Below, one piece after another: positions 30,235 through 63,366 of a stretch of 64,000 nucleotides of DNA. Made by a program: the position numbers and the translations under genes. The stretch's first letter is position 1, and each line of letters opens with the position of its first letter. The notes below the pieces were generated by a model, which ran no database searches, was not told the origin of the DNA, and saw only the letters and a list, made by a program, of their open reading frames with translations. Source of the DNA: Lytechinus pictus (lineage: Eukaryota); contig NC_087262.1 of the NCBI RefSeq assembly GCF_037042905.1, forward strand, positions 5,332,001 to 5,396,000. The letters are read 5' to 3'.

Positions 30235-30277
<43 letters not shown>

Positions 30278-35557: not shown

Positions 35558-35675
35558 ATGATACCAAGTATCAAAGCGCAGTTGAGTATATGCACATAGT
35601 AACCGCTATAGGTAAAATAAGACGTAATAAATAAATAAATAAAAAATAAAATATAAATGGACATGTTATTATTAT
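35558..35675 (+). mobile_element. SINE 3' tail fragment
   Basis: Near-exact reverse complement of about 4425-4493 (GATACCAAGTATCAAAGCGCAGTTGAGTATATGCACATAGTAAC). Confidence 0.75.
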
Positions 35676-36329: not shown

Positions 36330-36646
36330 CACTGTTAGAAAAAAAAAACCCAGAAGATTTTACAGAAAGAAATAACCAAATCATTCTGTAAATTGTTATA
36401 ACAGGAAAGATTTTCTAAAAAATTTCTACAATTCTACAATTTTATACGGAACAGGTCTGTTATAAATATAGGCGAAAAAGTTTTATTACAATAAATTTAT
36501 AAGGTTACACACACCAAATAGCAATTTTCTTTAACTTTACATATATGCATGTAAGATTACACAGTGCAGTAAGATTACAGGTGTTCTCGAGACTCTGCTG
36601 CAGGAATTGTTTAGGGTTTTTTTTAAGTAGAACTTTTTTATCAGTG
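36330..36646. mobile_element. CACTG-ended MITE
   Basis: CACTGTTAGAAAA ... TTTTTATCAGTG, TG TSD, internal TTACAG repeats. Confidence 0.75.
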
Positions 36647-36866
36647 TGGCCAGACTCTGGGCAGATAGAGTGGGTGTGGGCGAGGGTGTGTATGTTTTGC
36701 GATTGTGAGATGATTTGACATGGTAGTGGCAGTGCCAAACAGAAAGAGTGAGATGAAGGAATAAGATACAAGATGTGAGAACTGAAAGACGATAACTACT
36801 GGGGGACGAAGTGATATGTCAAGAAAATGGGGGACGGGCAGGAGAGATGGGTCATCGAAAAGAGTG

Positions 36867-37266
36867 CACTGCAAACACTCCGGTGTTGATTTAACACCAG
36901 TCCGGAATCTATACACTATACACTAATTTAGCACTTACAGTGCTTGTATAGTGACTGCACTACGAGTGCTGATTTTCTAGTTTAAATTTGAACTAGAAAA
37001 TCAGCACTCGTAGTGCAGTCACTATACAAGCACTGCAAGTGCTAAATTAGCACTTCATTTCTTACAGTGAATATGTCCACACCAGAGAAGTATTGAAACA
37101 AAACCAGTTTGGAATCAAATCCATGCTGTTTTAATTATAATTGGTGTTGTATAAACACCTATCTGGTGTTAGACCGAGACCAAACTGGTGTAGTTTAAAA
37201 CTTCTCCGGTGTGGACATATATAGATTCCGGGCTGGTGTTAAATCAGCACCGGAGTTTTTGCAGTG
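36867..37266. mobile_element. CACTGCAAA-type MITE hosting a nested MITE
   Basis: CACTGCAAACACTCCGGTGTTGATTTAACACCAG / CTGGTGTTAAATCAGCACCGGAGTTTTTGCAGTG, TG TSD. Confidence 0.9.
36914..37069. mobile_element. Nested palindromic MITE of the 2770 family
   Basis: Near-perfect fold-back of about 60-bp arms, inserted in the TATA run of the host left arm; left TIR damaged. Confidence 0.85.
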
Positions 37267-38057
37267 TGGTAATGGTCAGATGAGACAGGGATTGGTAATG
37301 ATAAGAGGTAGCATAAAATTGAAACGTACCGCCAAGGTTTTTTTTTATTGGTGGATTGTTACAAGTCGGAAAGAACCTCATTTTGTTCGGATAGGTAGGT
37401 TTGGGTTGAAGTTTTATCTTCACACTTAACCTGTGAAATTATGTAGGCCTATATTTTGCGTTTGAATAATAACCATATGTAATTCGCTCTTCAAACGGAA
37501 CGAAACAAATTTAAAGGATATGATCTCTATATTTTTATTCTACCAAACACACAAAATGAACAATCGGGATATTTGACACTTCAGTGAGTAGTGAGTCGCA
37601 AACTGACAAAGAACATTTCTTCGTACTTGCAGAGGGTGATGTTGATAACTTTCGTATGATTGATGTACACCTGTAATGAACTATTGAAACGGTGCAGTGG
37701 ATTACACAGAATTGTCACAACATTATTAAATTGAATGCTGAGATAACATTTTTATTTATGTATTTTTATTTTCATTTTATTTTTTGCTTGCAGAGACTTT
37801 CCAAAGCTAAAAACGTTTATTTTATGTATGGCATTCCTTTCCTTCAATATGCATACAACTTAATAGCAAAATGAGAATAATGGCTGGTTTTCTGCCTAAA
37901 CGTTCCTCGCAAAGATTCGCCAGTCATTATTTTGATCCGTTTGGCGCTGGCTGTGCGTTGGCCAAATTTTATCGTAGAGAGTGGCACGAGCAAGAAATAT
38001 GCCATCCTATTGTATATTGCTTCTTATCTTCAAGGAATGACGGAGAATACTTCCATG

Positions 38058-41874: not shown

Positions 41875-44509
41875 CGGCCTCTCGAGCTCTAGGAGGAGTC
41901 AAATGTGGCTTTGGAAAGTCGTCCTCAATGAGATATATCGCTGTTACCATAGTAGCAACCAAAATTTTGCACACGAAACGCATATTGAATGTTTCCGTCG
42001 CAGATGCGAAACGAAAAAAAAATCTCATGTCACACAATTTGCATTGCTGGACGACCATGATGACGGGCCCAAAAAGTCTCTTCCAAAATCAACTAACGTC
42101 GTAAATAAGCGTGCGCGTCCTCAAACGAAAGGTCCGGATTGATCAAGTTTCAAACCTCATTCATCGGGTGAACGAACTCTGTATTGTGTTGGAGTGGAGT
42201 GGAGTCTTGAATGTCACCGATCACTCAGTCTTGCCGATTTTCGCATGGATAGAGTGGCTGTGAAAGACGATAAAACTCGACAGATATGTGCCTGTCTGTC
42301 AGTGAATGTATTGTAATGAGGAAAGTTTACCGGGAAGATTGGGGTTTGCGAAGTAGGTTATAAGCGTCAGGAATATTTCAGGTCTTCAACCCAATATCGC
42401 ATCATTCATTTTTGCTTGGAATGCATCTATTTCGTCATTCTCATCGTGTCCATCCGCATATTTTTCGCTCTTATTCTCTCTTTCAATTTCCACTGCACCC
42501 ATCACGTCTCACTCACTTCCCCCTCTCCTTTCTCTAATATGGTGTACAGGTGTTGGTACTCCATGGGTCTTTTCCTGTCCCCTTTGCCATCATCACATTT
42601 CCGCTATTACCCTCATTATGGGTCTGGAAGGCTTTTCATCTGACATGTTTTCAGATCCGACAACTTTCCCCAACTTGTGATTGGCTGAGAAACACGTTTC
42701 CTATGACAACCACTGTCGTATAATACATACTTTGTCGGATAAAGCACCCGACATTTCCTTTCACGAAATGCTCCTCAGGCCATTTTGCCATAGTTCTCCA
42801 TGCCCTTCAACCATTCTCCACGTCCACTTATAAGCTCATTACCTTCCCACATCTCCTTCTTCTGGTAATATTACATTGAAAATTTAGTTTTTTTATTTTA
42901 TTTTAAATTGTTTTGCCCTATCACCCTGATCACACCTTCAGCCACGAAAGAACTATCCAGGATTTGACATCTCATTTCAACGCAAAACTTTCATCACCTA
43001 GAGGCTACTCCCCAAAATCATGAATGAAAGGTCTCTATACCTATCAAAATAAGGCTTATCCTTATCCTCCTCAATATTATAACGAAAGCAAAAGTGGATG
43101 TAGTCACGTGACCTGTAACCTAAGTTAGGGTGTCCATCGTAATCCCATTAATGGTCGTCTTGTTGCGGGCTGCCTGTCTTGTCAAAGAGAGTGACTGCAT
43201 GTGTGGTCAGTTCACAACTTCTTTCCAAACCTCGACTCTTCTCCATCCTAGATCGTTGGTTGCTTCCTTGCCTGAAAATGCGACAGCTTTATGGACAAAT
43301 CAAAGGCTTAGCTCCGTCATTCACTGTCCATGTAATATTTGAGGAAAAAAAATCCTTTGTTGAACCAATTATAATTCTGGTAATGATGACAATTGTATCT
43401 TTGACATTTTATCTTGAATGGTGCGTCGATCGTTCAAACTTTGGCATTGAGGGTTGCAATTATTATTCTATATTTGGTAGATTGGCATGAAAACTTATTT
43501 CTCTAATTCTTTAGTAGGAAAGGAACGAGAAAATTGAATGTCAGTTGATGTTGCATTCTGATAATAAAAATCTCGACGGACCAAGTTAGAGTCTAGAATC
43601 GCAGAATACTGTAAAATTCAATATTTCTATTCGTTTTCCTTCACTCGGGCGAAACGACTGGAATGATGTAAACATGTCATATTATAGAACCTTATTCGGG
43701 GTGTTGTTGGCTTATGAAGCCAGCAAATTTCATTAATACATTTCCATCCAAAATCTGTTTTCTATTTCATTACGTATGAACTAGGTTAATGGTTGTGATC
43801 GACCCACCATACGGGGTATAAGTACAATACGATTGAGCGGGTTCTAAGATCCATTTGAAAGTTCATGGAAGTCATCGACCTCCGGAAGTGATCTCTCCAG
43901 ACGACCTTCCCCCTACCCACATACATACATACAAACATACACACACAAACATACAAACACTATTTGCAGATCAAGGATGTTTCAAATCTGAAGCAGTAAT
44001 ATTAAATCAGGTGTGTACTATTCGATTAAATTGGCGCATGTACATTTTGCTTTGTATCATATTTTAGACTATTTCACCGTATTCTTGAAAAATACTTCTT
44101 TATTTAAATAGGTACTAAATATGAAAGAAGACCCTTTCCTTATATAGTTGTCAGATGAGGTGAGGAAAAAGTGTAGTATTATACGATAATCGGTTTTTAG
44201 AGTTCTTATTATCTTGTAGTCAACAACTCAAAATGACACGCAATGTGACGGTAATACTACCCGTTTCACTCCTACACCTGTATATTTTTCCAGTATTTGA
44301 ACCGCAACCTCAGAAAATAGATAAAGGTACTGGTCACGAAAGGGGGTCAAGCCATGACGATATACCAACTCTTTAGGTCACACTTCCTATATTACCAGGT
44401 AGTGCGGTGTGGCATGCATTAGTAACGAATATTCCATATGGTGGGTGGTGATGATGAAGATATTATGGTCCGAATTAATCTAAGTTCGCTCTGTCACTCA
44501 TCGTTTACT

Positions 44510-45800
44510 CTCTGCATCTTGCCCTTCTCCCCTCTCCCTTCCCTTCCCTCCCATCTCCCTCTCTCTATCTGTCTATCTCGTCGCTCTCTTATAAGGGTTC
44601 TTTAATCCAGACAAGATGTGGACGTCCTGAAGATTGTCTTGGAGACTTAACCTGTCTTGAAGAATTTTGTGAATGTAATGGGTTGCCATATTTCACTTTC
44701 CCCCTCTCCTTTCTTCGCCTTCCTCCCCTCGCTACCCCCTTCTCGCAACCTCTCTCTTTGGTATGGTGTTTGGGCTGTAATCTTAGGAAGATGTGGACAT
44801 TGTCATCGTCAAGACATTAGAGTGATATCATGCAGATGATCGCAAATATAGATGTTGATATGAGACATTCACATTCTCTTTCTCTCTCACCAAACTTTTA
44901 TCGCCCTCCCCCTCCGTCTTTTTCTCTCATCTCTACGAATCTTCGCCCCCTTCCACCGTGTATGGGCTGTAACTAATTTTCAGAAGATTCGAACATCATG
45001 GAGACATTGGTTGTGATTGAAAAAACATGCGTAACTTGGACGCAAATAGCTGCTGATATTACATCAGTAACCTTCTTTACTCTTTCTTTTGAATGATTTC
45101 AACAATTTTTACATCCACCCCTCCCCTTCTCTCTCTCTTTCTTTCTCCCTATCCCTCCCCTCCATATCTTAAGCGATGTATGGTTTGTAATCGGTAAAAG
45201 ATGTGGAGATCATTAAGACTCTCCAGGGGTGATTGAAACAGCAGGCGCATTTAAAGTTTAATAACTGTTGGTATCAGTTCTCCTTAACGTCTTCTTTAAA
45301 ATGACCTAAAGGAATATTGTGCACAACTTTACCGCTCCATTCACATTATCCCATCTCCCTCTCTCTTCCCCAATGTCCCCCTGTCCTCCCCTCCGAATCT
45401 CACCCCTCTATTATTAATTTTCTCTATTACAGCAGTGTTTGGTGATTTGGCATGCATCTCTCTGGGTCTTTCTCCCTCTCCCATCTTCGCCTCGCTCGCT
45501 GCGCCTTCATTCTCAACCCTCGTCCCCCTCTCCCTCACTTCGTCCTTTTTTGAATGATCTGTAAAAATATTGTTCACACCTTTACCGTCCCTTCACATTT
45601 TCTCACTCTGCCCTCCTGTCCTCCCCTCCTAATCTCACCCTTCGTCCCCTCCCCTGTATTATCCCTTTTCTGTATTACAGCGGTGTCATGTTCTGTAATC
45701 TAAAGAAGATGTGGACATCGTGAAGACAGACGTCATGCAGTGATGATCGCAAATAGCTGTTGATATATGACTTCGTCTTAACGTCCTCTTTTTAATGATT
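44510..45800. repeat. Degenerate tandem array (units of about 175-250 bp) alternating CT-rich tracts with an AAGATGTGGA motif
   Basis: Motif copies at about 44613, 44789, 44984, 45199 and 45706, several followed by GATCGCAAATA / GACGCAAATAG. Confidence 0.65.
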
Positions 45801-47819
45801 TGTATGTTTTTTTTAACACCCTTCCCCTCTCCTCATCTCTGTTGTTAACATTCAGGCTCTTCCCTTTTGGATCTTTTTTTCTTTATTTTTTTTTACTCAC
45901 TGCATATCTTTTTTTTCCAGTCATATTTAGCTGTCTTTCTTTTCTCCCTTTCTTACCTCTTTCAACGTGGGTTTTCTTAAAAATTGCGAAGTATTATTAC
46001 GTATAATGGTGATCAATTAGAAAGGCATTACCACCTAGGAATCTGTGCAGATATTGTTAATTTTCAATTTAATCCTTTATTATTGCTTTAATTATTCGGT
46101 AATTTTTTATTTTCAACTTAGTTTCAAAGCATATATATACACTTTATTTCAAATGTAAATATATATGTGTTTTTTTAATGGAAGTTTAATTTACCAAGCA
46201 TTTTACTGCTTTGCAAAAAAATGAGGATAGGTTTAATCATTAAACTTGTAAGTTTATGAATTAAGAACCAATGATAGTAGTGGGCGAAGACTGGCGTAAT
46301 CATTAAACAATCATTCCATTAACTGAAATACACTTGAACATGTTCAAAATGCATTGAATCTGATGAGTGTGATAACGTTCTTATTTTAGTGTGACCAGTC
46401 CCATCCGTTCATTTTCTTGTAGTGTCTCATCAGATAAGATCTGCTGATCAATTAGTCCCATCTATACCCGTTGTTGTTATGCTGGTGGTTGATGGTGAAT
46501 GTTGATAAAACCATGGACCTATAACGATAGCACATCCCTTTAGATATACAGGTCTCCTTGTGGATCTACATGACGAAAGGTATTAACATATAATCACACA
46601 GAAAAATCTGACATTTTTATCAATGTCATGTGGGCTGATAATTAAAATACAATAACAAATCAGTAGAACAAAATCATTTCAAGAGGGCCCATCAAGTCAC
46701 CGTCAGTTCAGGGAATGAGGCCTCCATGATTATTGCACGTGATTTTGATTTGTAATTTTGTCAGTGCCATTCGCATAAAACATTTTACTATGACATTCTC
46801 AATCTACCACGATGCCATAGCACATGAAAACAAAAAAATAAATCTTTAGTTTAAAAAAGTTAAATTTCTCCTGTAAAAAGTTTTGTGCAACAGTAATCGG
46901 ATAATGCAATGTTTCAAATTTTGTGACACATTTTCAATCATATACGAAGACTATTGAGATTATGCTCATATTTCATTCATTTCATTTATGTACTTCATGT
47001 GTTGTTATGTCAAAAGTACTTCCTTTAAAATTTAACTTTAATAAGAGTATATCAAATTGCGAATGTTGGCTGATTTTTTTTTTTTCATTGTCATTGCGAT
47101 ACTTTATATTGTAAAATGGCATCCACATTCTATGTTATCTTGAAAAGTATCAAAATGTCTACATTTACGTTTTTGGTGTTTTGGCCAGTTATCAAAAGTA
47201 GTCGCTTTTGTAATTGTAATTGGAGACGATTGGATATCGATGTGACAAATGAAGTGAAAACAACCCAAAACGCCTTACATTTGTTAGAAGGATTAGCACT
47301 AGAAACTATGCCGTCATCTATTGTAATCGTTAATTAAGCTGATAGGAAATCAATATGAACAATTTGACTTAATCTCCGGGGTTAATCTACCAAACGCCGT
47401 GTACTGTAAAACCACACACAGTCATTCCGGTGGAACCGACCCGAGACTGACCAAAATTCATTACGCTATTTCCAATGGCATACCATTTGTCGATTTGGAG
47501 TCGGTATCATTGGTACGTCTGTAGCTGTAACACTGATATCGAATTAAGACTTGACAATGAACAAGTATCCGGTCAGCACCGAAGCCGTGACATCTGTTTT
47601 CCCCCTGGTACAACCTCGCTGAAAATAGAGTCGTAAAACCAGCGCTCTCAAATAAACCCAGTTTATGGTATCCTTAAATCAAACGAGGTTTATTGATGGA
47701 GGGAATTTGTGATAGGATGGGTAACACTGATTTGAAAATCAATTCATTTTCGAAATAATATTCCATCTGTGAAAAAGATTTGTGAAGATAACACGGTACT
47801 GCATCACTAAATCTGAACG

Positions 47820-52647: not shown

Positions 52648-53588
52648 TTGGAAGTATCTTGTAATTGATGAGAAATGAGCAAAACAAGCATGAAATCTGC
52701 CCGATGTCGGGACTTCTCCAAACTCTGATAACATACTCTCTGCGTTGTTGATCTACAGTGTGATGGTAACTGATTTCGTGAGTCACAAAGTTAAATTAAG
52801 TCAATTCAATAATTTAATTATATACTTGAAAATAAAAACCAAATGTCAGATAAGGATGGGTTGAAATTACTAAAATGATTTTGGAATTAATACAAGAGTT
52901 ATCTAAAGAAGATGTGAAGCTGTTAGATTTTGTTTTTGTCAAATGATAGGCTCCTCTATCTTAATGAGCAAAATAAAGAAATCGGACTGTAAATAATTTT
53001 GTACTGATCTTTTTTTTTACTGTTAAGTTATGATTTTTTTTCAATCCATAATTCATCGGGAGAGATGATATGTGAGTTTTTTCTGCTAATTCTACCAATA
53101 TTTATGACATTTGTCATTAACTCTGGGCAAGTAGAAAAAACAAATTGTTGTGAACAATTATTTTATAAAGTAACTTCCGCCCCCCCCCAAAAGAAACTCT
53201 TTATTAAACAAATAAATCAAGTTGTGTTTAATATGCCCATGGAGTGGACCCTCATGATATGGTTTAATATCTGTCTTTCTTTTTAAATCAAATCTAAAGT
53301 AGCAATTTATTTAGTCAAATAAGAAAAAAGTGAGGAGAAGGACCATACTTAGTAGCTGGTATTTTTCAGGATTTTGACACCAGTGACTGAGTCGGGGAGC
53401 ATGACCGATATTTTCTCGCTTGGTAAGCCTCCCGTGCTGTTTCGTACGTGCTTGTTTTTCCATAGCGTGAATTCATCGTAACCTAACTGCTTACGCTATG
53501 GGTCTTGGGAATTTTAAGTAGACATGTGGGGGTTTAAAGGCCCTGCTTACCGCCATGTTCTAATAACTACCTTGCTATAACATGCTCA

Positions 53589-54035
53589 TAAGTGTGATTT
53601 GGATAAAATGAATGAAAATTTATATAATTATTTGTTATCTTCCCCAAACGTATTCATTTGTATGAATTAGTTAAGCCGGTTGAAAAATTATATAATTGTT
53701 TGTGACCTTGTTAAGGCATATTCATTAGTGAAATTTGATAAACCGAATGAAAAATTATATTATCATCTGATACATTCTTCAAGCATAATCATTAGTGAAA
53801 TTAGATAAGCAGAATGAAAAATTATACAATTATTTGTTATCTTGTCCAAACATATTCATTAGTGTGAATTAATTATTAAAGCCGAATGAAAAATTCTATG
53901 AATGTTACCTTGTTAAATCATATTCATTGGTGAATTGGATAAACCAAATGAAAAATTATATTATTGTCTGATACCTTGTTAAAACATATTATTTGGTGTG
54001 AATTAGTCAAACCGAATGAAAAAAAATCTACAATT
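53589..54035. repeat. AT-rich minisatellite, about 66-68 bp, about 7 copies
   Basis: Recurrent ATATTCATTAGTG...GATAAACCGAATGAAAAATTATA. Confidence 0.8.
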
Positions 54036-54067
54036 GCTTAATTTTTCTTTTGCTTATATACTATCAG

Positions 54068-55682
54068 TGTGACTGCCTTCGTAAAACTTTCTACGAAGGA
54101 GTTTCGTCTACTTATGTCCAACTATTGTTATTCACAAGGCACAAGGAATCAATCAATGCTGGACTCGACTTGTTGAAATAAAACAAACTTTCGCTTTATT
54201 CAGTTAATCTCCAACACTGGTGACAAACTTCAGTCGTACTTTCAGTTATACTTATATGCACCTTCAGATAACAATCTGTAATGATAATGAATAAACAAAC
54301 AATAATAAACAAATGTTTCATCTTGAAATCATGTCAATTACTAAATCTAAGTTAGTACAACAATTACGATTACATATGATTAAATGAGAATTAATCTGAC
54401 ACTAATATAAGTGATCATCATACACTTGTACTATTATACCTTATAACATTAACCTAATTTAATAGAGTATAAAATATACAAGGAATAAAGTTAATCTATT
54501 GATTAAATCCTCGTATGAACACATCTACACTCACTTTGTGCTGTGCACTACTAAGTATTCTACCCAATAGATATTGGCCGGGTGAACATAACTACATGCC
54601 AACACAGTCATTCATTCAAGGTTTCTCCCTAAATCACTCCCAGAGGAAAGGTCTTTCTCTCCACGAAAGTTATGGTTTTGTTCTTAATAACAAATTGGCC
54701 ATGTACGAACAGTAATCTACATTATCACAAGTTAAACATGAAACTAAAGAAGTAACTCTTTAGAGATGATTAGAGTATAATAAGAAAACAAACTAGTAAT
54801 AGTTCCTACTATTACACTAACTCAGCTTATAACGAAACAGCATAACATTATTCTATCTTAAGATTAAAGTTAAACCAGATTAAAATACAAATGTGAACAA
54901 GCCCTGCATTTACAACGTGCAGTAACTTATCTACTCAAAAGAGAAAGTAAAAAGGGATGAATGTGAAAGGGGCCACATTCCAAAGTAGTCATTCATAGAC
55001 CCTGCTTCTACTGGATTAGCAAAAACAGACTCTCTTTGTTTCCCAATGAAACTAGACTTCTTGCTTTATGTATAATTACACCCAACTAATTCATTGTATT
55101 TAAAAGCCTTTTACATCTTAGCACTTCTAGATGGAAATGTATTATACAAGAACAATATTATGAGATCTATCAACATCAGTATATTCACCTATTCCTCAAA
55201 TATACTAAACTGTACAACAAAGAAATCAACTTTCCTACACTATGCAATATACGTATTACACTCTGTTAACACAAACACATAATCTTCTCTAACTAAAAAC
55301 ATTCAAAACTATCTTAAATAGTAATATGAATTCTACAATATATTTACCATGTTAAATATCAAAACAATATTATATGAAATATGTTCTTACCGAATTGGGC
55401 CTTTGTAGTTGTCCACAAATAACAATTTACTTGAACTTTCTGCAACTGATTGTGAGTAGTACTTTACTCCATCACTCTGACTATGAGAATGAAAGTTATC
55501 TTTACTTCCAAGAAGATATTCTTGGAGAGAAGTTGGAGAACAATGAAATTACTCTACTATTAGCGGTGAGTCACACCTTCTGGGGAAACATATACCTCTT
55601 TGGTGGTATAGTCTTGATAATCAGACTCTTGATGAAGATTGGATGAGAGAATATAACATCACTACACACTGCTGTAGTGACA
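54068..55682 (-). repeat. 3' LTR (relative to the ORF)
   Basis: Same sequence as 61752-63366 at offset 7684 wherever checked; AATAAA on the minus strand at 54195-54200. Confidence 0.97.
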
Positions 55683-55945
55683 TGGCTCCTTTAAATGTAC
55701 CTACATTTACTAAATTAGCTTCAATTATTACGAATATAAAGTACAACAAATTATACCACATCATAATACAAATTAATCTTAAACAATACTTTGACCAATA
55801 ATATACCCAATGGATACATACACACAATGCAACCTTTAAAACAGCATTCTAGCCTTTAGAATTATCACTGAACCATACATGAAAAGAAAAACAACAATTT
55901 AAACGCATCATTTATATCATCGTTAAATGAAAATGTAAAAGATAA

Positions 55946-56016
55946 TGGCTCTTTGAGGGGGAAAGCTCCGAGTCTTTCGCGAGACAAATGGGATACTTCC
56001 ACTTTACTACTGTGGA
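55946..56016 (-). pseudogene. Degenerate full-length tRNA-Asp(GTC)-derived sequence with encoded CCA in the element 3' UTR
   Basis: TCCACAGTAGTAAAGTGGAAGTATCCCATTTGTCTCGCGAAAGACTCGGAGCTTTCCCCCTCAAAGAGCCA aligns end to end (about 52 of 76 columns by hand) with canonical animal tRNA-Asp recalled from memory. The acceptor stem and B box are broken. Confidence 0.75.
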
Positions 56017-56032
56017 TTTTGAGTGGGAATAA

Positions 56033-59000
56033 TTACTGTTGATTGGGTAACAGAAGAACTAACTTGTTTACTGGTCTGTCGAATTTAGTTGGTGGGCTCT
56101 GGCGTTTGCCATTATTATCTAACTGTCCATCAGCCATTAGAAGTTTTACCTTCCTAATTCTACCATCGGCACTAGGATAGACATCTATCACCCTAGCTAA
56201 GGGCCACTTGTATCGTCCTCCCTCCTCTTCTTTGGAGATTACAATATCACCTATCGTTAAGTCTTTTTCTGTACTTGTCCATTTTCTACGCTCTTGCAGT
56301 CCCTGCAAATATTCTTTCCTCCATCGTAGCCAGAACTCATTGGCGAGGTGTTGGACGCGTCTCCACCACTTCCTAGAGTACACATCTTCGCGCTGGAAGA
56401 CTCCTGGTGGGGGTAATATGACTTTGGGCTTGGCAGTCAAGATATGATGAGGGGTCAGTGGTTCTGGTGCTTCACTGTCACTTAGATTGGTTGTCGTCAA
56501 TGGCCTGGAGTTGATTATGGCTTCTGCTTCGGTCATGAAGGTTCTGAAGGCCTCATCATCAAGTTGACTCCCAGATGATTTCAGCAATGGCTCTAGTGCA
56601 CGTCGCACTGACTGAATCTGCCTCTCCCAAACTCCACCCATATGAGAGGCATGGGGCACATTCATCTTGAATGGTATCCAGTCACATCCATTCTCAAGCA
56701 GGTACTCTTGTACCTTTCCCTGGTCCATTTCAGACAGCGCTTCCTTCAACTCGTTTCTGGCTCCAATGAATGCTGTACCCTGGTCAGAGCGTAGATGCCT
56801 TACAGCACCCCGTCGATTCATGAAACGCCGCAACGCGTTGATGAAGGCACTGCTACTAAGACTGTTAGCAGTTTCCAGGTGTACACTTCTTGAAGACAGA
56901 CATGTGAAGAGCGCACCATATCTCTTGACTTCACTCCGTCTTTCCTTGATAAGAAAGGGTCCAAAATAGTCCACTGCACAATACGAGAATGGTGGAGAAG
57001 GCTCAACTCTTTCTTCTGGAAGATCTGCCATCTTTTGTTGGAGGGGCTGTCCTCGCAATCGTCGACATGTCACACAGGACGAGATGCATTGTGAAACTGC
57101 AGACACTCCTCCTATCACCCAGTATCCTCTCTGACGTAGCTCATTATGAGTAATGCCTCTACCACTATGTTGGGTCCTGTGATGAGCATCTCGGATCAGC
57201 AGTGTTGTGACATGACTCTTACGAGGAATAATCACTGGATGTCTAATGTTACTGGACAAATTGGCGCGATGTATCCGGCCGCCGACTCGAATCACCCCGT
57301 CATCATCTAGAAACGGGTCCAATCTGAAGAGGGCACTGGTTTTCTTCAGTGCCGCATTTCGAGTAGGTACTTCATGTCTACTCATTTCTCCTGTCTTATC
57401 TAGTTCTTTAAGAATCTGCAGCTCCTGCGGGAAGTTTTCTTGTTGTAAACCTCTAATGATGACCTTCTCAGCTTCCTGCAGCTCACTCACTGTCACAACC
57501 TTAGGGATCGTTGCTTCCACTGATCTAGAACTCGTTCTGGTATGCTGGTTAGCCCTTTTCTTCAGACTCGTCTTCAGCTGTATACATCTGGCTACTGCCT
57601 TCTTGGCAGAGTGCCAACTGGAGAAGCAATTCAAACGGTTGGATTCAAATTGCCCTGTACTGACCTTGGTAGTTGCTTCTGTTCTCAGGACTGAGGCATG
57701 CTTCACCTCTGGGTCGTGGTCATCTACCGTACATGGATCATCTCCTGGGGGTGCAAACAAACCATCATTCCACAGGAAATCTGGGCCTCGAAACCAGCAG
57801 TGGCTAGAAGTGAGCTCCTTTGATGAGATTCCTCGAGAAGCTCCATCAGCAGGATTCTCCTTGGTATCAACATAGTACCATGCATCAGGGTCAGTCTGCT
57901 CTCGGATTGTCTGAACTCTGTTGGCAACGAAGATATGAAACCGCCTGGCTTCATTTTTTATGTATCCAAGAACAACCTTACTGTCTGTCCAGAAGAACTC
58001 CTTCACAGAATCGTATTCCAGTTCCGACTTCAGGAATGTGCTGCTCTTGGCTGACAATGTTGCTGCTGTTAGCTCCAGTCTTGGAATGGTAATTGGTCTC
58101 AATGGAGTAACTCGGGCCTTTCCGATTACGAATGAACAATGCACTTTGTCATCCTCATTGATGAGACGGAGATATGAACATTGCCCATACCCATCCTGAC
58201 TGGCATCAGAGAAATGGTGGACTTCTACCTGCTTGACCTTGCCGAACCTACTTGGTTTGTAGCATCTCTTGAGTTGGAGGTCACCTAGATGCTGGAGATC
58301 AAGCAGCCATTTCTCCCATTCTGAACGCTGTTCATCGGTCATAGATTCGTCCCAGTCCATGTTCTGCTTGCACATAGCTTGGAGAATCCTCTTGCCTTTA
58401 AGAACTACTGGACCAAGAAAGCCGCTTGGATCATAGATTGAACTGATCGTTGAGAGAACACCTCGTCTGGAGAATGAGTTTGCCTTCACCTGCCCTCTGA
58501 AGTTGAAGGTGTCATTCTCAATGTTCCAGGACACTCCTAGAACTCTTTCCAGCACAAGCTTGTCGACATCTAAATCCAGGTCTTGCAGGCTTTTTGCTCG
58601 TTCATCTGCTGGAAAGCTTTTCAGAACTTCTCTGCTGTTAGACACAATCTTGTGCAATTTCAGTCCTGATTTTGCACAGATTGCTTGACTGTTTTTCAGC
58701 AGCTGCACAGCCTCTTCCGCAGTAGGTCGTGAACTAAGACCGTCATCTACGTAGAAGTCTCTACGAATGAACTCTGCTGCACTTGAACCGAACTCTTCTT
58801 CACCATCTGTTGCAGCCCTTCTCAGTCCAAAGTTACTGCATCCTGGAGAACTAGCTGCTCCGAAGAGATGAACCTTCATCCGGTATTCAACAGCTTCCTT
58901 TGTTTCGTCACCGCCTTCATACCACAGGAACCGCAGCAAGTTCCGGTCTTCTTCATTTACGTAGAACTGAAGGAACATTCCTTTCACATCAGCCATGAAG

Positions 59001-61642
59001 GCAACTTCTTCCTTTCGGAATCGGCACAGAACACCAAGTAGTCCATTCATCAGGTCAGGACCTTGCAGAAGATGATCATTCAAGGATACACCTTCAAATT
59101 TTGCTGAACAGTCGAATACAACACGAATCTTGTCAGGCTTGTGTGGATGGTACACCCCTGTGTGCGGAATATAGTTTACTCTGCCATCTCGAACCTTCAA
59201 GCAGTCATCTGGTACTCGTTCTGCGTAGTTGGTGATTACATCATCCATGAAGGCCTTGTAGTCCTCCAGAAACTTCTGGTTCTTCCTAAATCTTGCAGAT
59301 AGCTGTCTCCATCTTTTAACAGCAAGAATCTTGTTGTCAGGAAAGGTCACATGATCAGACTTCAAAGGCAAGGGCATTTGGTAGTGTCCATCACTTCTCT
59401 TGCGGATTCCATTCTCAAAGATTGCCATGAATCTTGCTTCTTTCACTGAAAGTGGCGCTCCTTTCGGACTTGTCATTTGGAAGTCTTGTTCCAAGATCTT
59501 CAGTACAGACTCTGGTGTAAACACTTCCTTCGCTTGGCTTGAGTGCACCAGGTGGGGATATCCTTCACTTGTCTGAATCCTGTTACAGACGGCATCATCA
59601 CTTTGAGAACTTTGACATACTCTGCCGACGACGCCCCATCCGAGTGAGGTTTTCATCGCATACGGGTCGTCTTCTGCACCAGCGAGTACTTCTCGGGGTC
59701 GAATTGCTCTAGGACAGTTGTTTCCTATGAGCAAGGAAACCTTAATTGACGGGTTGTATGGCATCAACTCATCTGCGATTGGTGCTAGATGCCTCCATTT
59801 CCTCAGAACTTCTGCCTTGGGAATTTGTGACCGCTTGGCCGGAACCTCTTGTCTGGTGTAGCAGGACGGGAGTTGGACAACTGTAGACTTCTGGAAGTCC
59901 AAGACCTCGAGACCACTAATCTTTTGACAGCTAATGCGAGCACTCTCGTGCATTGTTGTCAGCAAAAGATCAGTCTCAGGTCCTTTAACACCCATTCTGT
60001 GGCAAAGACCACTGGAGACAAATCCAACGTTGGACTGGTCGTCGAGGATCGCATATTCCAGGAATTCCCTCGATGGATCATCAGCTTGCCTCACCCAAAC
60101 CGGCACAATCATACAATGGTCCTTTCCATCTTGGTCAGGAAGATCGCAGATGTTGGTACAGTTTGAGCTAGCCGATGATTTTTCTATCTTCTGTCGGTGT
60201 AGGCATGTCAAGTGGTTTCCCTTACACCTTTTACATTCCCGGCGTTGCTTGCAGTCCTTCCCAAGGTGGTTGCTACTTTGGCCACATCCCATACACAGAT
60301 ACTTCTTGAAGAAGAACGTCTTCTTATCCTTGTAGTAGATCTGCTTGAACTCTGGGCAGTCGTCGATGTGATGGTCCTTATCACAGTAAGGACATGATGA
60401 ATACTCCTTTCCATGTGCGGCTGTTGTAGACAGTGACCGACCTTGAAAGGTCTTCCCTTTCGGAGGTGCTGACTTTACTTTCGCCTCGTCTAACCTGGTG
60501 TATTCCAACTCTGGAATATTGGCCACTTCTGCTGCACTGGTGACGAAGTCTACAAATCTGGCAAAGGTAGGGTAACTGCCATATCCACATCGCTGCCACT
60601 TGGTCACCTCGTCTCTCCATTTGCGTTCAAGGTAGAATGGAACCTTCCTCAACAGCTTGACGTTCTCCTGCGGATAATCGAGAATGCCAAGGGAATCAAC
60701 AGTCACCTTGGCAACGCTGACCTGCTGGAGAAAGTCCGCAAATGACCGCAATCCACTTGGATCCCGATCTGAGATTCTCGGCCACGTGTTTAACTTCTTC
60801 ATGAATGCTGATGAAACTACACTGGTGTTGCCATACCTGCTGGCGAGAGACTCCCTTGCTTTCAGGTAAGCTTCATCGGTGCCAAGAAGAAGATAATGCT
60901 CCACGACCTTCTTTGGTTCACCAGTAACATATGTATGCAACATATGAAGCTTGGTTGCGGCATCTAGAGGCTTGGAGTCAACGAAACTTGAAAATGCATT
61001 TCTCCAGAGGGGATATCGTAATGGGTCACCATTAAATACCGGAACATCCACCTTTGGTAACTGACTGGCTGCCAATACTTGTTGACTAGTCGCATTTTGA
61101 TTCAGCATCATGTTGGCTACCTTGGCAAGTGACTCAACCACGTTTTCCATTCCTGGTGAAGCGTTGGTTGGTTCATGCTTCACTTCACTCAGAGTGGCTG
61201 GAACTGGTGGGGCTTGGGTCTGGATCTTGCCCTCATCCGTCGATTGAGATTCAAAGAATCTTTGAACAGACTCCTCCTTCGTCTCCTCTGGCAACTTGAT
61301 ACTGGTGTTTGAGAGCTCATCTTCTGATTCTGCAAGTTCGGCTAATTTCTGCTGATGTTCTTTCTGCAGCTTCAACCGTTTCAGCTCCATCTGGGCTCTC
61401 TCCAGTTGCATTGCATGTTCATGCTCCCTTTGCAGAATCTTTATGTTGTCCTCTTTGTCCATAACATCAAGTTCAGCCTGAAAGGCCTTGATAAGCATCT
61501 CGCTTTTGGCTGATTTTCTGCTTGCTAGACTCCTAGCTGGTTTTGGATACTTATCCATCATTTCTGGCAGCGAAGAGGACGTCCTCTGAAGATCTACACG
61601 TGTAGCCTCGCTGACTAGATTTTTTCCATCTATGTTGGCCAT
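56033..61642 (-). CDS. BEL/Pao Gag-Pol polyprotein (1869 aa from the first ATG; frame open to at least 61729)
   Basis: Gag LPKVDVPVFNGDP; three Zn knuckles (CPYC..H..C, CMGC..H..C, CKRC..H..H); protease ILDDQS; RT FYVDDG; RNase H HFSDAS / LELTAA / WTDS; integrase HHCC plus VDYFGPF / SDQG / WERQI; C-terminal FWLRWRKEYL; no env. Confidence 0.97.
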   Translation of the reverse strand: MANIDGKNLVSEATRVDLQRTSSSLPEMMDKYPKPARSLASRKSAKSEMLIKAFQAELDVMDKEDNIKILQREHEHAMQLERAQMELKRLKLQKEHQQKLAELAESEDELSNTSIKLPEETKEESVQRFFESQSTDEGKIQTQAPPVPATLSEVKHEPTNASPGMENVVESLAKVANMMLNQNATSQQVLAASQLPKVDVPVFNGDPLRYPLWRNAFSSFVDSKPLDAATKLHMLHTYVTGEPKKVVEHYLLLGTDEAYLKARESLASRYGNTSVVSSAFMKKLNTWPRISDRDPSGLRSFADFLQQVSVAKVTVDSLGILDYPQENVKLLRKVPFYLERKWRDEVTKWQRCGYGSYPTFARFVDFVTSAAEVANIPELEYTRLDEAKVKSAPPKGKTFQGRSLSTTAAHGKEYSSCPYCDKDHHIDDCPEFKQIYYKDKKTFFFKKYLCMGCGQSSNHLGKDCKQRRECKRCKGNHLTCLHRQKIEKSSASSNCTNICDLPDQDGKDHCMIVPVWVRQADDPSREFLEYAILDDQSNVGFVSSGLCHRMGVKGPETDLLLTTMHESARISCQKISGLEVLDFQKSTVVQLPSCYTRQEVPAKRSQIPKAEVLRKWRHLAPIADELMPYNPSIKVSLLIGNNCPRAIRPREVLAGAEDDPYAMKTSLGWGVVGRVCQSSQSDDAVCNRIQTSEGYPHLVHSSQAKEVFTPESVLKILEQDFQMTSPKGAPLSVKEARFMAIFENGIRKRSDGHYQMPLPLKSDHVTFPDNKILAVKRWRQLSARFRKNQKFLEDYKAFMDDVITNYAERVPDDCLKVRDGRVNYIPHTGVYHPHKPDKIRVVFDCSAKFEGVSLNDHLLQGPDLMNGLLGVLCRFRKEEVAFMADVKGMFLQFYVNEEDRNLLRFLWYEGGDETKEAVEYRMKVHLFGAASSPGCSNFGLRRAATDGEEEFGSSAAEFIRRDFYVDDGLSSRPTAEEAVQLLKNSQAICAKSGLKLHKIVSNSREVLKSFPADERAKSLQDLDLDVDKLVLERVLGVSWNIENDTFNFRGQVKANSFSRRGVLSTISSIYDPSGFLGPVVLKGKRILQAMCKQNMDWDESMTDEQRSEWEKWLLDLQHLGDLQLKRCYKPSRFGKVKQVEVHHFSDASQDGYGQCSYLRLINEDDKVHCSFVIGKARVTPLRPITIPRLELTAATLSAKSSTFLKSELEYDSVKEFFWTDSKVVLGYIKNEARRFHIFVANRVQTIREQTDPDAWYYVDTKENPADGASRGISSKELTSSHCWFRGPDFLWNDGLFAPPGDDPCTVDDHDPEVKHASVLRTEATTKVSTGQFESNRLNCFSSWHSAKKAVARCIQLKTSLKKRANQHTRTSSRSVEATIPKVVTVSELQEAEKVIIRGLQQENFPQELQILKELDKTGEMSRHEVPTRNAALKKTSALFRLDPFLDDDGVIRVGGRIHRANLSSNIRHPVIIPRKSHVTTLLIRDAHHRTQHSGRGITHNELRQRGYWVIGGVSAVSQCISSCVTCRRLRGQPLQQKMADLPEERVEPSPPFSYCAVDYFGPFLIKERRSEVKRYGALFTCLSSRSVHLETANSLSSSAFINALRRFMNRRGAVRHLRSDQGTAFIGARNELKEALSEMDQGKVQEYLLENGCDWIPFKMNVPHASHMGGVWERQIQSVRRALEPLLKSSGSQLDDEAFRTFMTEAEAIINSRPLTTTNLSDSEAPEPLTPHHILTAKPKVILPPPGVFQREDVYSRKWWRRVQHLANEFWLRWRKEYLQGLQERRKWTSTEKDLTIGDIVISKEEEGGRYKWPLARVIDVYPSADGRIRKVKLLMADGQLDNNGKRQSPPTKFDRPVNKLVLLLPNQQ

Positions 61643-61739
61643 GATGAAAAACTTTTGGGCAGTAAAGTTCCAAGTAGTATGTTTGGATGATTCCAGAACT
61701 TTCTGAACGTGATCCTGACTGGACGACACAAGTTGTCCG

Positions 61740-61751
61740 TTCGATTGTTAT
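61740..61751 (-). promoter_or_regulatory. Non-tRNA primer-binding-site position (ATAACAATCGAA)
   Basis: Abuts the 5' LTR, lacks TGG, and is complementary to the predicted LTR splice junction. Confidence 0.55.
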
Positions 61752-63366
61752 TGTGACTGCCTTCGTAAAACTTTCTACGAAGGAGTTTCGTCTACTTATG
61801 TCCAACTATTGTTATTCACAAGGCACAAGGAATCAATCAATGCTGGACTCGACTTGTTGAAATAAAACAAACTTTCGCTTTATTCAGTTAATCTCCAACA
61901 CTGGTGACAAACTTCAGTCGTACTTTCAGTTATACTTATATGCACCTTCAGATAACAATCTGTAATGATAATGAATAAACAAACAATAATAAACAAATGT
62001 TTCATCTTGAAATCATGTCAATTACTAAATCTAAGTTAGTACAACAATTACGATTACATATGATTAAATGAGAATTAATCTGACACTAATATAAGTGATC
62101 ATCATACACTTGTACTATTATACCTTATAACATTAACCTAATTTAATAGAGTATAAAATATACAAGGAATAAAGTTAATCTATTGATTAAATCCTCGTAT
62201 GAACACATCTACACTCACTTTGTGCTGTGCACTACTAAGTATTCTACCCAATAGATATTGGCCGGGTGAACATAACTACATGCCAACACAGTCATTCATT
62301 CAAGGTTTCTCCCTAAATCACTCCCAGAGGAAAGGTCTTTCTCTCCACGAAAGTTATGGTTTTGTTCTTAATAACAAATTGGCCATGTACGAACAGTAAT
62401 CTACATTATCACAAGTTAAACATGAAACTAAAGAAGTAACTCTTTAGAGATGATTAGAGTATAATAAGAAAACAAACTAGTAATAGTTCCTACTATTACA
62501 CTAACTCAGCTTATAACGAAACAGCATAACATTATTCTATCTTAAGATTAAAGTTAAACCAGATTAAAATACAAATGTGAACAAGCCCTGCATTTACAAC
62601 GTGCAGTAACTTATCTACTCAAAAGAGAAAGTAAAAAGGGATGAATGTGAAAGGGGCCACATTCCAAAGTAGTCATTCATAGACCCTGCTTCTACTGGAT
62701 TAGCAAAAACAGACTCTCTTTGTTTCCCAATGAAACTAGACTTCTTGCTTTATGTATAATTACACCCAACTAATTCATTGTATTTAAAAGCCTTTTACAT
62801 CTTAGCACTTCTAGATGGAAATGTATTATACAAGAACAATATTATGAGATCTATCAACATCAGTATATTCACCTATTCCTCAAATATACTAAACTGTACA
62901 ACAAAGAAATCAACTTTCCTACACTATGCAATATACGTATTACACTCTGTTAACACAAACACATAATCTTCTCTAACTAAAAACATTCAAAACTATCTTA
63001 AATAGTAATATGAATTCTACAATATATTTACCATGTTAAATATCAAAACAATATTATATGAAATATGTTCTTACCGAATTGGGCCTTTGTAGTTGTCCAC
63101 AAATAACAATTTACTTGAACTTTCTGCAACTGATTGTGAGTAGTACTTTACTCCATCACTCTGACTATGAGAATGAAAGTTATCTTTACTTCCAAGAAGA
63201 TATTCTTGGAGAGAAGTTGGAGAACAATGAAATTACTCTACTATTAGCGGTGAGTCACACCTTCTGGGGAAACATATACCTCTTTGGTGGTATAGTCTTG
63301 ATAATCAGACTCTTGATGAAGATTGGATGAGAGAATATAACATCACTACACACTGCTGTAGTGACA
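61752..63366 (-). repeat. 5' LTR (relative to the ORF)
   Basis: TGTCACTAC ... GCAGTCACA on the minus strand; 1615 bp. Confidence 0.97.
61960..63074 (-). other. Predicted spliceosomal intron inside the LTR (1115 nt; also 54276-55390)
   Basis: Donor CG|GTAAGA, acceptor TTTGTTTATTCATTATCATTACAG|, U-rich interior; the exonic remainder of the LTR is 500 bp. Confidence 0.6.

What the first reader, a model, noticed from the sequence alone, without database searches (positions are those of the whole stretch)
61740..63080. PBS position is the exact complement of a predicted splice junction in the element's own LTR (candidate splice-generated self-primer)
Seen in sequence: the 12 nt directly 3' of the 5' LTR (element sense AUAACAAUCGAA, 61751-61740) have no TGG tRNA signature. 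Joining the LTR donor (...AAUUCG|guaaga, exon end 63075) to the last acceptor (...uuacag|AUUGUUAUC, exon start 61959) gives UUCG|AUUGUUAU, a 12/12 complement. The 3' end of that complement pairs with the base adjacent to the LTR-terminal CA, which is the geometry needed to prime minus-strand strong-stop DNA. Unspliced RNA gives only 9 bp (GAUUGUUAU). Established: fission-yeast Tf1 self-primes using its transcript 5' end paired to the PBS, after cleavage. Inference: here the full self-primer may exist only after splicing, coupling reverse transcription to splicing. I know of no description of this in BEL/Pao elements but cannot search.
Basis: partly seen in the sequence, partly recalled or inferred. 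Interest (0 to 1): 0.92.

Follow-up and report, generated by a model that had tools for sequence, protein, structure and literature searches.

The report
Splice-built self-primer in BEL/Pao retrotransposon
A young sea-urchin BEL/Pao retrotransposon, and at least 18 related families, seem to start reverse transcription from their own RNA instead of a host tRNA, and in most of them the primer sequence exists in one piece only after an intron inside the LTR is spliced out.

Summary

The element (window 54068-63366, minus strand) is an intact BEL/Pao retrotransposon of Lytechinus pictus. It has identical 1615-bp LTRs and a CTGAT target duplication, so the 12 nt after the 5' LTR are placed exactly. 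Joining the LTR donor (exon end 63075) to the acceptor (exon start 61959) gives a 12/12 complement of those 12 nt. The unspliced sequence gives 9.

In this window alone the match is weak evidence. The weight comes from 23 related families:
- 14 have a GT..AG intron (90-1184 nt) splitting an 11-16-nt complement of their own post-LTR sequence.
- 5 have the same complement uninterrupted, collinear with the predicted spliced product.
- The sequences co-vary: UUCG/CGAA, UUUG/CAAA, AACG/CGUU and many others.
- PBS-swapped controls reach 11 nt in 2% of pairs, against 14 of the first 18 families.

The intron also evolves faster than the rest of the LTR and carries 26 ATGs, against none in the spliced leader.

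Best reading: Tf1-like self-priming with a primer assembled by splicing. Splicing, cleavage, and cis versus trans priming remain unobserved. I found no published description, and the ICTV profile says this virus family is tRNA-primed.

The parts
54068..63366 (-). Complete BEL/Pao LTR retrotransposon (9299 bp) of Lytechinus pictus
   Evidence: LTR pair and TSD; Pfam Peptidase_A17, DUF1759, DUF5641, Integrase_H2C2; 99% identical to L. pictus XP_063959911
63367..63371 (-). Target-site duplication CTGAT, 5' side
   Evidence: same pentamer at 54063-54067
54063..54067 (-). Target-site duplication CTGAT, 3' side
61752..63366 (-). 5' LTR, 1615 bp, TGT...ACA
   Evidence: 100% identical to 54068-55682
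54068..55682 (-). 3' LTR. Carries the same donor (exon end 55391), intron (55390-54276) and acceptor (exon start 54275)
63128..63133 (-). Inr-like TCAGTT, candidate transcription start 57 nt upstream of the donor (inferred only)
   Evidence: Position. Similar CAGTT motifs lie upstream of the primer in L005, L027 (with a TATATAAA about 30 nt upstream), L061 and L081. The block from about 63175 to the donor is conserved in L003 and L004 while the rest of U3 is not
63075..63078 (-). Last 4 nt of LTR exon 1 (UUCG), the 5' part of the primer; pairs with post-LTR nt 9-12
61960..63074 (-). LTR intron, 1115 nt, GTAAGA...TTACAG, T-rich 3' end, TACTAAC at 62041-62035, 30% GC, 26 ATGs, no ORF over 70 aa
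   Evidence: Diverges 2-15 times faster than the flanking LTR parts between family copies
61952..61959 (-). First 8 nt of LTR exon 2 (AUUGUUAU), the 3' part of the primer; its last U pairs with 61751
61879..61951 (-). Start of the stretch between the primer and the poly(A) signal. Degenerate CTGAAGGT-like repeats begin at the nucleotide after the primer; AATAAA at 61884-61879
   Evidence: Same layout in L002-L005
61808..61817 (-). U5 motif GAAUAACAAU, a PBS-like copy that can pair with the primer (possible alternative fold)
   Evidence: Conserved as CCTTGTGAATAACAA in L002-L004
63098..63110 (-). Exon-1 stretch AUUGUUAUUUGUG, a near-complement of the LTR end plus the first 8 nt after it (possible PBS-masking helix)
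61760..61783 (-). U5 hairpin CCUUCGUA...UACGAAGG, 8 nt before the LTR end
   Evidence: Consensus fold with compensatory changes across six families
61740..61751 (-). Primer-binding site AUAACAAUCGAA, directly after the LTR
56033..61642 (-). Gag-Pol ORF, 1869 aa plus stop, uninterrupted
55683..55692 (-). Polypurine-type tract AAAGGAGCCA abutting the 3' LTR; the ..GGAGCCA|TGT motif is shared by most relatives

Best explanation
This lineage of BEL/Pao elements does not use a host tRNA. Minus-strand DNA synthesis is primed by the element's own LTR-derived RNA, as in fission-yeast Tf1.

The primer is an 11-16-nt stretch of the R region. It pairs with the nucleotides immediately after the 5' LTR, and its 3' end sits opposite the first post-LTR base. 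In most families, including the one in the window, a spliceosomal GT..AG intron inside the LTR interrupts that stretch 5-9 nt from its 3' end. The full primer (here UUCG+AUUGUUAU) therefore exists only in spliced RNA.

Proposed steps for the window element:
1. Transcription starts in the LTR upstream of 63075, possibly near 63131.
2. The 1115-nt intron (63074-61960) is removed.
3. The exon junction pairs with 61751-61740.
4. An endonucleolytic cut after the U at 61952 (RNase H in Tf1) exposes a 3'-OH.
5. Reverse transcriptase copies U5 and the repeat stretch.
6. The strong-stop DNA transfers to the 3' LTR copy.

Shown here: the anatomy, the junction complementarity, its covariation, and the intron-like properties.

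Inferred: that splicing happens, that the cut happens, and that the duplex primes. Whether the spliced RNA primes itself or a co-packaged unspliced RNA is open. Trans priming would most simply explain why new copies keep the intron in both LTRs.
For: 1. Exact geometry. The LTR edge is fixed by the TSD and identical LTRs, and the complement ends at the first post-LTR base.

2. Conservation with covariation.
- Echinoid families at 55-73% protein identity keep the arrangement. Changes are matched: CGAA/UUCG in WIN, L003 and L004; CAAA/UUUG in Diadema L002, in both LTR copies; and a wholly different 11-mer in L005.
- Metagenome families add AACG|AUUGUUAU, AAUCG|UUUGAC, AGAG|UUUUUAC, ACAUUGAG|UUGAC, CAGU|UUUUUCCAC, AAUUAUAAC|UUCUCAC, GAUCAGAC|UUUUCAC, AUCGUC|UUUUUAC and CUAG|UCUUUGAC.
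- 18 tabulated families have 15 distinct primer sequences, all perfectly matched.

3. Controls.
- At least 11 nt in 14 of 18 families, against 2% of 256 PBS-swapped pairs (none at 13 or more).
- 3 of 355 shuffles give any hit in the strict blind scan.

4. Intron properties.
- Donors are GTAAGA, GTAAGT, GTGAGT, GTAAGC, GTACGT, GTAGTC and GTAGCG. Every acceptor is YAG after a T-rich tract.
- Within the window's family the intron diverges faster than the LTR parts on either side: 93.6% against 99.7/99.5%, 87.9% against 96.9/96.6%, and 96.4% against 98.3/98.6%.
- The intron holds 26 ATGs, against 0 in exon 1 plus exon 2 plus leader. Across families, 23 are observed against 71 expected.

5. Five intron-less families (L005, L006, L027, L081, Styela L097) carry the joined sequence contiguously. 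Four are placed on the tree, and each is sister to or nested among intron-bearing families. This is as expected if spliced RNA is occasionally copied.

6. In each of the 10 intron families checked by eye, the far part of the post-LTR sequence matches exon 1, not the intron's 3' end. In primer-copying systems the PBS is rewritten from the primer, so this points to spliced primers (inference).

7. The consensus fold recovers the long-range helix and a co-varying U5 hairpin next to the PBS. Duplex energies are -11 to -18 kcal/mol.

8. No tRNA-type PBS, no Rfam family in the LTR or leader, and no anchored tRNA match.
Against: - No RNA evidence: the junction, the transcription start and the poly(A) site are all inferred.
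- Five sampled copies of the window's family all keep the intron, so no spliced LTR was seen within the family.
- If the same RNA is both primer and template, the 5' copy of the intron must be spliced while the 3' copy stays unspliced for progeny to keep the intron. No mechanism for that asymmetry is shown.
- Thermodynamic folding of the spliced leader gives the primer:PBS helix a probability from 0.00 to 0.99 depending on family (0.23 in the window), with competing helices.
- A long 5' RNA fragment as primer raises an unsolved question: where does plus-strand copying of the primer stop?
- One clade of four families (L039, L041, L047, L051) has no such complement.
- Most of the 80 metagenome loci could not be scored, because their LTR edges are not defined.
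Confidence: 0.72

Rival explanations
1. Unspliced three-way junction. The post-LTR sequence pairs with both exon ends while the intron stays in place as a looped-out arm. The helix either primes from the 8-9-nt acceptor-side half without any splicing, or regulates splicing by masking or juxtaposing the splice sites. Splicing then serves only to make a translatable mRNA.
For: - Progeny keep the intron in both LTRs, which is simplest if the template and primer RNA are unspliced.
- The unspliced sequence already gives 7-9 anchored nt in most families.
- The helix covers the last exon-1 bases and the first exon-2 bases, which are the splice-site flanks.
Against: - In L054 and L018 the acceptor-side half is only 5-6 nt.
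- Intron-less families show that the contiguous form works.
- If primers were unspliced, plus-strand copying of the primer would overwrite the far PBS positions with the complement of the intron's 3' end. All 10 families checked match exon 1 instead (inference).
- Nothing in this model explains why the helix always ends at the first base after the LTR.
Confidence: 0.13
2. Plain Tf1-type self-priming. Transcription starts at the CA|G in front of GAUUGUUAU (an Inr-like site), so the first 8-9 nt of the transcript pair with the PBS. The apparent donor and exon-1 match are coincidence.
For: - ..TTACAG..TTTCAG and ..CCAA in front of the complement resemble initiator motifs.
- Tf1 uses exactly the transcript's first 11 nt (established knowledge).
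- Within the window alone, the 4-nt exon-1 extension is not significant.
Against: - The exon-1 part co-varies with post-LTR positions 9 and beyond in 14 families. It is 8-9 nt long in L054, L057 and L073.
- Swapped and shuffled controls are far lower.
- In the intron-less L027, L081 and L097, a TATA box and CAGTT-like motifs lie tens of nt upstream of the primer.
- The donor block is the best-conserved part of the upstream LTR.
Confidence: 0.03
3. A host RNA is the primer: a tRNA fragment (as in copia or Ty5), an snRNA or another small RNA. The LTR complement is then incidental or a decoy.
For: - The ICTV profile describes Belpaoviridae as tRNA-primed (PMC8742986), and the BEL/Pao element Achilles has a tRNA-Tyr PBS (PMC4580426).
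- Post-LTR nt 6-13 of the window element are complementary to the generic T-loop GTTCGATT.
Against: - The T-loop match is 8 nt, is not anchored at the LTR edge, and is lost in Diadema and the metagenome relatives.
- Primers differ between families living in the same genus (L. pictus against L. variegatus L005) and always match that family's own LTR.
- No TGG anywhere near the LTR edge.
- A full host tRNA set could not be searched.
Confidence: 0.02

Closest known systems
Tf1/Tf2 of Schizosaccharomyces pombe and the Tf1/sushi group of Ty3/gypsy elements (self-primed reverse transcription)
   Same: - No tRNA.
- A sequence in the element's own R region pairs with the PBS directly after the 5' LTR over about 11-12 nt.
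- The duplex ends exactly at the LTR edge, so a cut at its end would give the priming 3'-OH.
- A U5 stem-loop sits next to the PBS.
   Different: - Different superfamily: BEL/Pao, not Ty3/gypsy.
- The primer is probably internal to the transcript (tens of nt from the start), not its first 11 nt.
- In most families an intron splits it, so it must be assembled by splicing.
- Cleavage is untested.
tRNA-primed BEL/Pao elements (ICTV Belpaoviridae profile, PMC8742986; Achilles, PMC4580426)
   Same: Same polyprotein architecture, LTR ends, short TSD, and PPT next to the 3' LTR.
   Different: The post-LTR sequence has no complementarity to a tRNA 3' end. It matches the element's own LTR instead.
copia and Ty5 priming by an internal fragment of initiator tRNA-Met (from my knowledge: Kikuchi et al. 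1986; Ke et al. 1999)
   Same: The primer's 3'-OH has to be created by cutting a longer RNA, and the PBS does not start with TGG.
   Different: There the RNA is a host tRNA shared by all families. Here it is family-specific and element-encoded.
Retroviral and retrotransposon leader splicing (major splice donor in R or the leader; spliced subgenomic mRNAs)
   Same: Pol II transcripts of the element are alternatively spliced, giving RNA classes with different fates.
   Different: - Here both splice sites lie inside the LTR.
- The exon junction itself is the functional sequence.
- In retroviruses the unspliced RNA is the one reverse-transcribed, and splicing plays no part in priming.

Membership tests
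BEL/Pao (Belpaoviridae) LTR retrotransposon | Pao-type Gag-Pol polyprotein (DUF1759 gag part, Peptidase_A17, integrase, DUF5641) | tested here: met
   Pfam hits, E 2e-46, 1e-12, 1e-4 and 4e-26; 3140 BEL/Pao-type homologues
BEL/Pao (Belpaoviridae) LTR retrotransposon | LTRs with TG..CA ends and a short target duplication | tested here: met
   1615-bp identical LTRs, TGT..ACA, 5-bp TSD CTGAT
BEL/Pao (Belpaoviridae) LTR retrotransposon | [quoted passage not shown] | tested here: not met
   No TGG. The post-LTR 12-mer matches the element's own LTR junction. Only an unanchored 8-nt T-loop match to the two tRNAs at hand
Tf1-type self-priming | The PBS abutting the 5' LTR is complementary to the element's own upstream transcript | tested here: met
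   11-16 nt in 18 families, 10 nt in Styela, with covariation and controls
Tf1-type self-priming | The complement is the first ~11 nt of the transcript | tested here: inconclusive
   The transcription start cannot be measured here. Conserved exon 1, Inr-like motifs and a TATA box upstream of the primer argue that it is internal
Tf1-type self-priming | RNase H cut at the end of the RNA:RNA duplex creates the primer | not testable with these tools
   Indirect only. The base after the primer is never a U that could extend the helix onto the LTR-terminal A, in all 19 families read
Tf1-type self-priming | Structured U5 stem-loop next to the PBS | tested here: met
   Hairpin 61783-61760 with compensatory changes in six families
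Tf1-type self-priming | Member of the Ty3/gypsy Tf1/sushi clade | tested here: not met
   The polyprotein is BEL/Pao
Spliceosomal GT-AG intron | GTRAGT-like donor, YAG acceptor and pyrimidine tract | tested here: met
   GTAAGA...TTACAG in the window, the same or better in 13 other families
Spliceosomal GT-AG intron | Precise presence/absence at the same point among relatives | tested here: met
   L005, L006, L027, L081 and L097 are collinear with the predicted spliced product. The four of them placed on the tree (L097 was not) need at least four separate losses
Spliceosomal GT-AG intron | Less constrained than the flanking exons | tested here: met
   Three within-family comparisons; ATG depletion of the exons
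Spliceosomal GT-AG intron | Exon-exon junction observed in RNA | not testable with these tools
   No transcript data could be reached. No transcript-derived contigs for these families among the hits
copia/Ty5-type priming by an internal tRNA fragment | PBS complementary to an internal tRNA stretch, anchored at the LTR edge and shared across families | tested here: inconclusive
   No full tRNA set was available. The two tRNAs found give only the T-loop 8-mer, offset by 5 nt. Family-specific primers argue against it

The most novel reading that the evidence does not exclude
Splicing is an obligatory licence for reverse transcription. Spliced sibling transcripts act in trans as sacrificial, element-encoded primer RNAs for co-packaged unspliced genomic RNA. 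That would explain why the intron survives in both LTRs of new copies, why it always sits inside the primer, and why it is lost only occasionally. An ancient marine-invertebrate lineage of Belpaoviridae (echinoderms, at least one tunicate, and unknown hosts in ocean metagenomes) would then have replaced the host tRNA with a splice-matured primer of its own.
Probability: 0.3. Interest if true: 0.95.

Novelty: new variant of a known kind. Interest (0 to 1): 0.9.

Why it matters
- Self-priming has so far been tied to the Tf1/sushi group of Ty3/gypsy elements. The current ICTV description of Belpaoviridae says replication is primed by a host tRNA (PMC8742986). This finding indicates that a large and old BEL/Pao lineage primes from its own RNA.
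- In most of its families the primer is written across an exon junction. That would be the first case I know of where pre-mRNA splicing creates a reverse-transcription primer, linking an RNA's nuclear history to its ability to be copied.
- It gives a testable answer to how an element can separate RNA for translation, RNA for priming and RNA for templating.
- It explains why tRNA-based PBS finders fail on these elements.
- It predicts a simple annotation rule: post-LTR 11-16 nt equals the reverse complement of an LTR exon junction.
- The intron-less LTR lineages become natural records of retrotransposition from spliced RNA.

Tried and rejected
- tRNA anticodon-arm idea. From memory, the primer resembles a GUU anticodon stem-loop. 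I kept this only as a lead and dropped it, because the sequence is family-specific and co-varies with the LTR.
- tRNA T-loop. There is a real 8-nt complementarity to GTTCGATT, but it is offset from the LTR edge and not conserved.
- A 'TATA box' (CATATAAG, about 61941) downstream of the acceptor would have put the complement in U3. It is CATAGAAG in the sister copy L001 and absent in the relatives, so I rejected it.
- Transcription start at the acceptor (plain Tf1 model). Rejected because of the exon-1 covariation.
- The exon-1-only null was badly designed: it drew k-mers from the same LTR. I use it only to say that the window alone is not significant.
- Thermodynamic folding of spliced leaders gave mixed support.
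- The viral-contig scan found no relatives. Rfam found nothing. There are no tRNAs in the window.
- I looked for transcript-derived contigs and for spliced LTR copies within families and found none.
- One ENA contig (P0003) had no retrievable DNA.
- Xiong et al. 1993 on Pao could not be read.
- Six literature searches found no description of BEL/Pao self-priming or of a splice-made primer. The library lacks most subscription journals, so absence is not proof.
Full report
WHAT IS THERE. Window 54068-63366 (minus strand) is a complete BEL/Pao retrotransposon. Its two LTRs (63366->61752 and 55682->54068) are 1615 bp long and identical at every base. They begin TGT and end ACA, and are flanked by a 5-bp target duplication, CTGAT. 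A single 1869-codon ORF (61642-56033) carries the Pao-type domains. It is 99% identical to annotated Lytechinus pictus proteins. The exact protein is on record from an L. pictus chromosome of 26,260,804 bp. The element is therefore young, apparently intact, and its LTR edge is known to the base.

THE OBSERVATION. The 12 nt after the 5' LTR are ATAACAATCGAA (61751-61740), with no TGG. The LTR contains ..CCCAATTCG|GTAAGAAC (exon end 63075) and ..TTATCATTACAG|ATTGTTATC (exon start 61959). Joining them gives UUCG+AUUGUUAU, a perfect 12-nt complement whose 3' end faces the first post-LTR base. The unspliced sequence gives 9 nt. Taken alone it is only suggestive:
- an anchored 9-mer occurs in about 4% of resampled LTRs;
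- with 65 GT[AG] sites upstream, a 4-nt exon-end match is not rare (a crude null);
- in PBS-swapped controls a 12-nt match, contiguous or across one junction, occurs in 0.8% of pairs.

THE COMPARATIVE TEST. I fetched full-length relatives through their polyproteins and delimited their LTRs by self-comparison.

Echinoid relatives:
- An S. purpuratus family (L003, 62% protein identity) and a second L. pictus family (L004, 61%) have LTRs of 1144 and 1243 bp that align with the window's LTR only in patches. Both have the same post-LTR 12-mer, the same donor ..CCCAATTCG|GTAAGAA, and the same acceptor ..ACAG|ATTGTTAT.
- In Diadema antillarum (L002, 73%) the post-LTR sequence reads ..ATCAAA instead of ..ATCGAA, and the donor exon ends ..AATTTG in both LTR copies. 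This is a compensatory pair that restores 12/12.
- An L. variegatus family (L005, 55%) has a quite different post-LTR sequence, ATAGAATACAA. Its 849-bp LTR has no intron and carries the 11-nt complement in one piece. That complement is preceded by sequence resembling the end of exon 1 in the other families.

Metagenome and tunicate relatives:
- Ocean-metagenome families L010 and L014 have CGTT in the PBS and AACG|GTAAGAA at the donor, with introns of 117 and 101 nt. Their relative L006 is intron-less and collinear with L010's predicted spliced product.
- More distant families (35-49% identity) have unrelated primers, each split by an intron with near-consensus signals: AAUCG|UUUGAC, AGAG|UUUUUAC, ACAUUGAG|UUGAC, CAGU|UUUUUCCAC, AAUUAUAAC|UUCUCAC (16 nt), GAUCAGAC|UUUUCAC (15 nt), AUCGUC|UUUUUAC and CUAG|UCUUUGAC.
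- Others are contiguous: L027 with 11 nt and L081 with 15 nt.
- A Styela clava element has a contiguous 10-mer.

In total, 14 families are intron-split and 5 are contiguous. The 18 tabulated families have 15 distinct primer sequences.

Controls:
- At least 11 nt in 14 of the first 18 families, against 2% of 256 swapped pairs.
- 3 of 355 shuffles give any hit under the strict blind scan.

IS THE INTERRUPTION A REAL INTRON? Four lines of evidence say yes.
- Signals. Donors have a purine at +3 in every case, and acceptors are always YAG behind a T-rich tract.
- Constraint. Between copies of the window's family, the intron is 93.6, 87.9 and 96.4% identical where the LTR parts on either side are 99.7/99.5, 96.9/96.6 and 98.3/98.6%.
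- Upstream ATGs. The window's intron has 26 ATGs. Exon 1 (57 nt), exon 2 and the leader down to the gag ATG have none. Over ten families, 23 are seen where 71 would be expected at the intron rate. Only the spliced RNA therefore has a clean leader.
- Phylogeny. On a polyprotein tree the intron-bearing families span the whole tree. Each of the four placed intron-less families sits beside or within intron-bearing ones, so at least four separate precise losses are needed. That is the footprint of occasional reverse transcription of spliced RNA.

WHY PRIMING. In every family the helix stops at the first base after the LTR. In all 19 families read, the base after the primer is never a U that could extend pairing onto the LTR-terminal A. 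This is the geometry needed to begin minus-strand strong-stop DNA, and it is what Tf1 uses (established knowledge; Tf1 self-priming is also noted in PMC5443660).
- A consensus fold of six families recovers the long-range helix and a hairpin 8 nt before the LTR end with compensatory changes.
- Short tandem repeats (CTGAAGGT-like units in the window) begin exactly at the nucleotide after the primer in five families. I read this, as an inference, as slippage at the 3' end of a strong-stop DNA that stops where the primer was cut.
- The far part of each PBS matches exon 1, not the intron's 3' end. Where the plus strand copies the primer, the PBS is rewritten from it, so this points to spliced primers (inference).

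WHAT IS NOT SETTLED.
- The transcription start is unknown. A conserved block and Inr-like CAGTT motifs lie upstream of the donor, and intron-less L027 has a TATATAAA about 30 nt before such a motif and about 90 nt before its primer. The primer is therefore probably internal, unlike in Tf1.
- If one RNA is both primer and template, its 5' intron copy must be spliced and its 3' copy must not be, or the progeny would lose the intron. All five sampled copies of the window's family keep it. Priming in trans by a spliced sibling RNA on an unspliced template avoids this problem, but it is speculation.
- Folding energies give the helix a probability of 0.00-0.99 depending on family. In the window, two competing helices involve an exon-1 near-complement (63110-63098) and a U5 copy of the PBS (61817-61808).
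- One clade of four families lacks any LTR complement and instead has a palindrome at the LTR edge.

RIVALS.
- A host tRNA or other small RNA does not fit family-specific primers within one genus. The only tRNA similarity is an unanchored 8-nt T-loop match.
- A start site at the acceptor, with an 8-9-nt Tf1-style primer, does not explain the exon-1 covariation.
- An unspliced three-way junction remains possible as the priming form or as a splicing regulator. I give it about 0.13.

NOVELTY. Six literature searches found nothing on self-priming in BEL/Pao or on a primer created by splicing. The ICTV profile states tRNA priming for the whole virus family, and one BEL/Pao element is reported with a tRNA-Tyr PBS. 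The library misses most subscription journals, and I could not read the original Pao paper, so priority cannot be guaranteed. I class the finding as a new variant of a known kind: self-priming in a new superfamily, internal to the transcript, and assembled by splicing. I rate it highly interesting.

Noticed in passing
L039, L041, L047 (first 13-15 nt after their 5' LTRs); L051: One clade of four BEL/Pao families has no LTR complement. In three of them the post-LTR sequence is a palindrome, TTTCGT(T/A)(T/A)CGAAAA, starting at the LTR edge. It could form a hairpin or an RNA-RNA dimer whose 3' strand faces the LTR end, which may be a third priming style.
   Followed up: partly
window 63098-63110 and 61808-61817: Exon 1 holds a near-complement of the LTR end plus the first 8 PBS nt, and U5 holds a PBS-like copy that can pair with the primer. 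Both helices appear in the minimum-energy fold of the spliced leader, which suggests alternative conformations that mask the primer or the PBS.
   Followed up: partly
window 61879-61951; L002-L005 equivalent positions: Degenerate short tandem repeats start exactly at the base after the primer in five families (CTGAAGGT, CTCAAGGTTTGA, CTACCTA units). [quoted passage not shown]
   Followed up: no
L097:9324-9794 (Styela clava): A tunicate BEL/Pao element with identical 471-bp LTRs and TSD AATAC. Its LTR ends ..TTATA rather than ..ACA. Its post-LTR GTAAAATACA has a contiguous complement about 215 nt upstream in the LTR, downstream of a TATAAA.
   Followed up: partly
L003:9836-9857: In the S. purpuratus family a perfect 10-bp hairpin (TGTTATTCGA / TCGAATAACA) lies just downstream of the PBS. 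It is built from PBS-like and primer-like sequence.
   Followed up: no
window 61739-61746: Post-LTR nt 6-13 are complementary to the generic tRNA T-loop GTTCGATT. This is seen against two sea-urchin tRNA genes found in flanking DNA of L094 and L095. It is not anchored at the LTR edge and not conserved in relatives.
   Followed up: yes
window 53568-54023: A tandem array with a 67/134-nt period lies about 40 nt from the element's 3' target duplication, so the element inserted next to a satellite-like repeat.
   Followed up: no
window 5955-6137 and 30147-30295: Long CAT and AGT trinucleotide microsatellites.
   Followed up: no
window 30000-38000 and 42000-46000: Strong opposite GC and AT skews in 2-kb bins (up to +0.19 and -0.25) with no long ORF. 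Only one ORF of 150 aa or more lies outside the element (18742-19272).
   Followed up: no
L005:10001-16847: The L. variegatus copy used for the intron-less family has an interrupted coding region: the longest ORF is 1070 aa, and the annotated gene does not translate colinearly. Its LTRs and PBS are still readable.
   Followed up: no
L014:4013-4419 versus 10808-11174: The two LTRs of this metagenome element are only about 71-73% identical. This suggests a chimeric assembly or recombinant element. The junction/PBS match was read from the 3' LTR and the 5' PBS.
   Followed up: no
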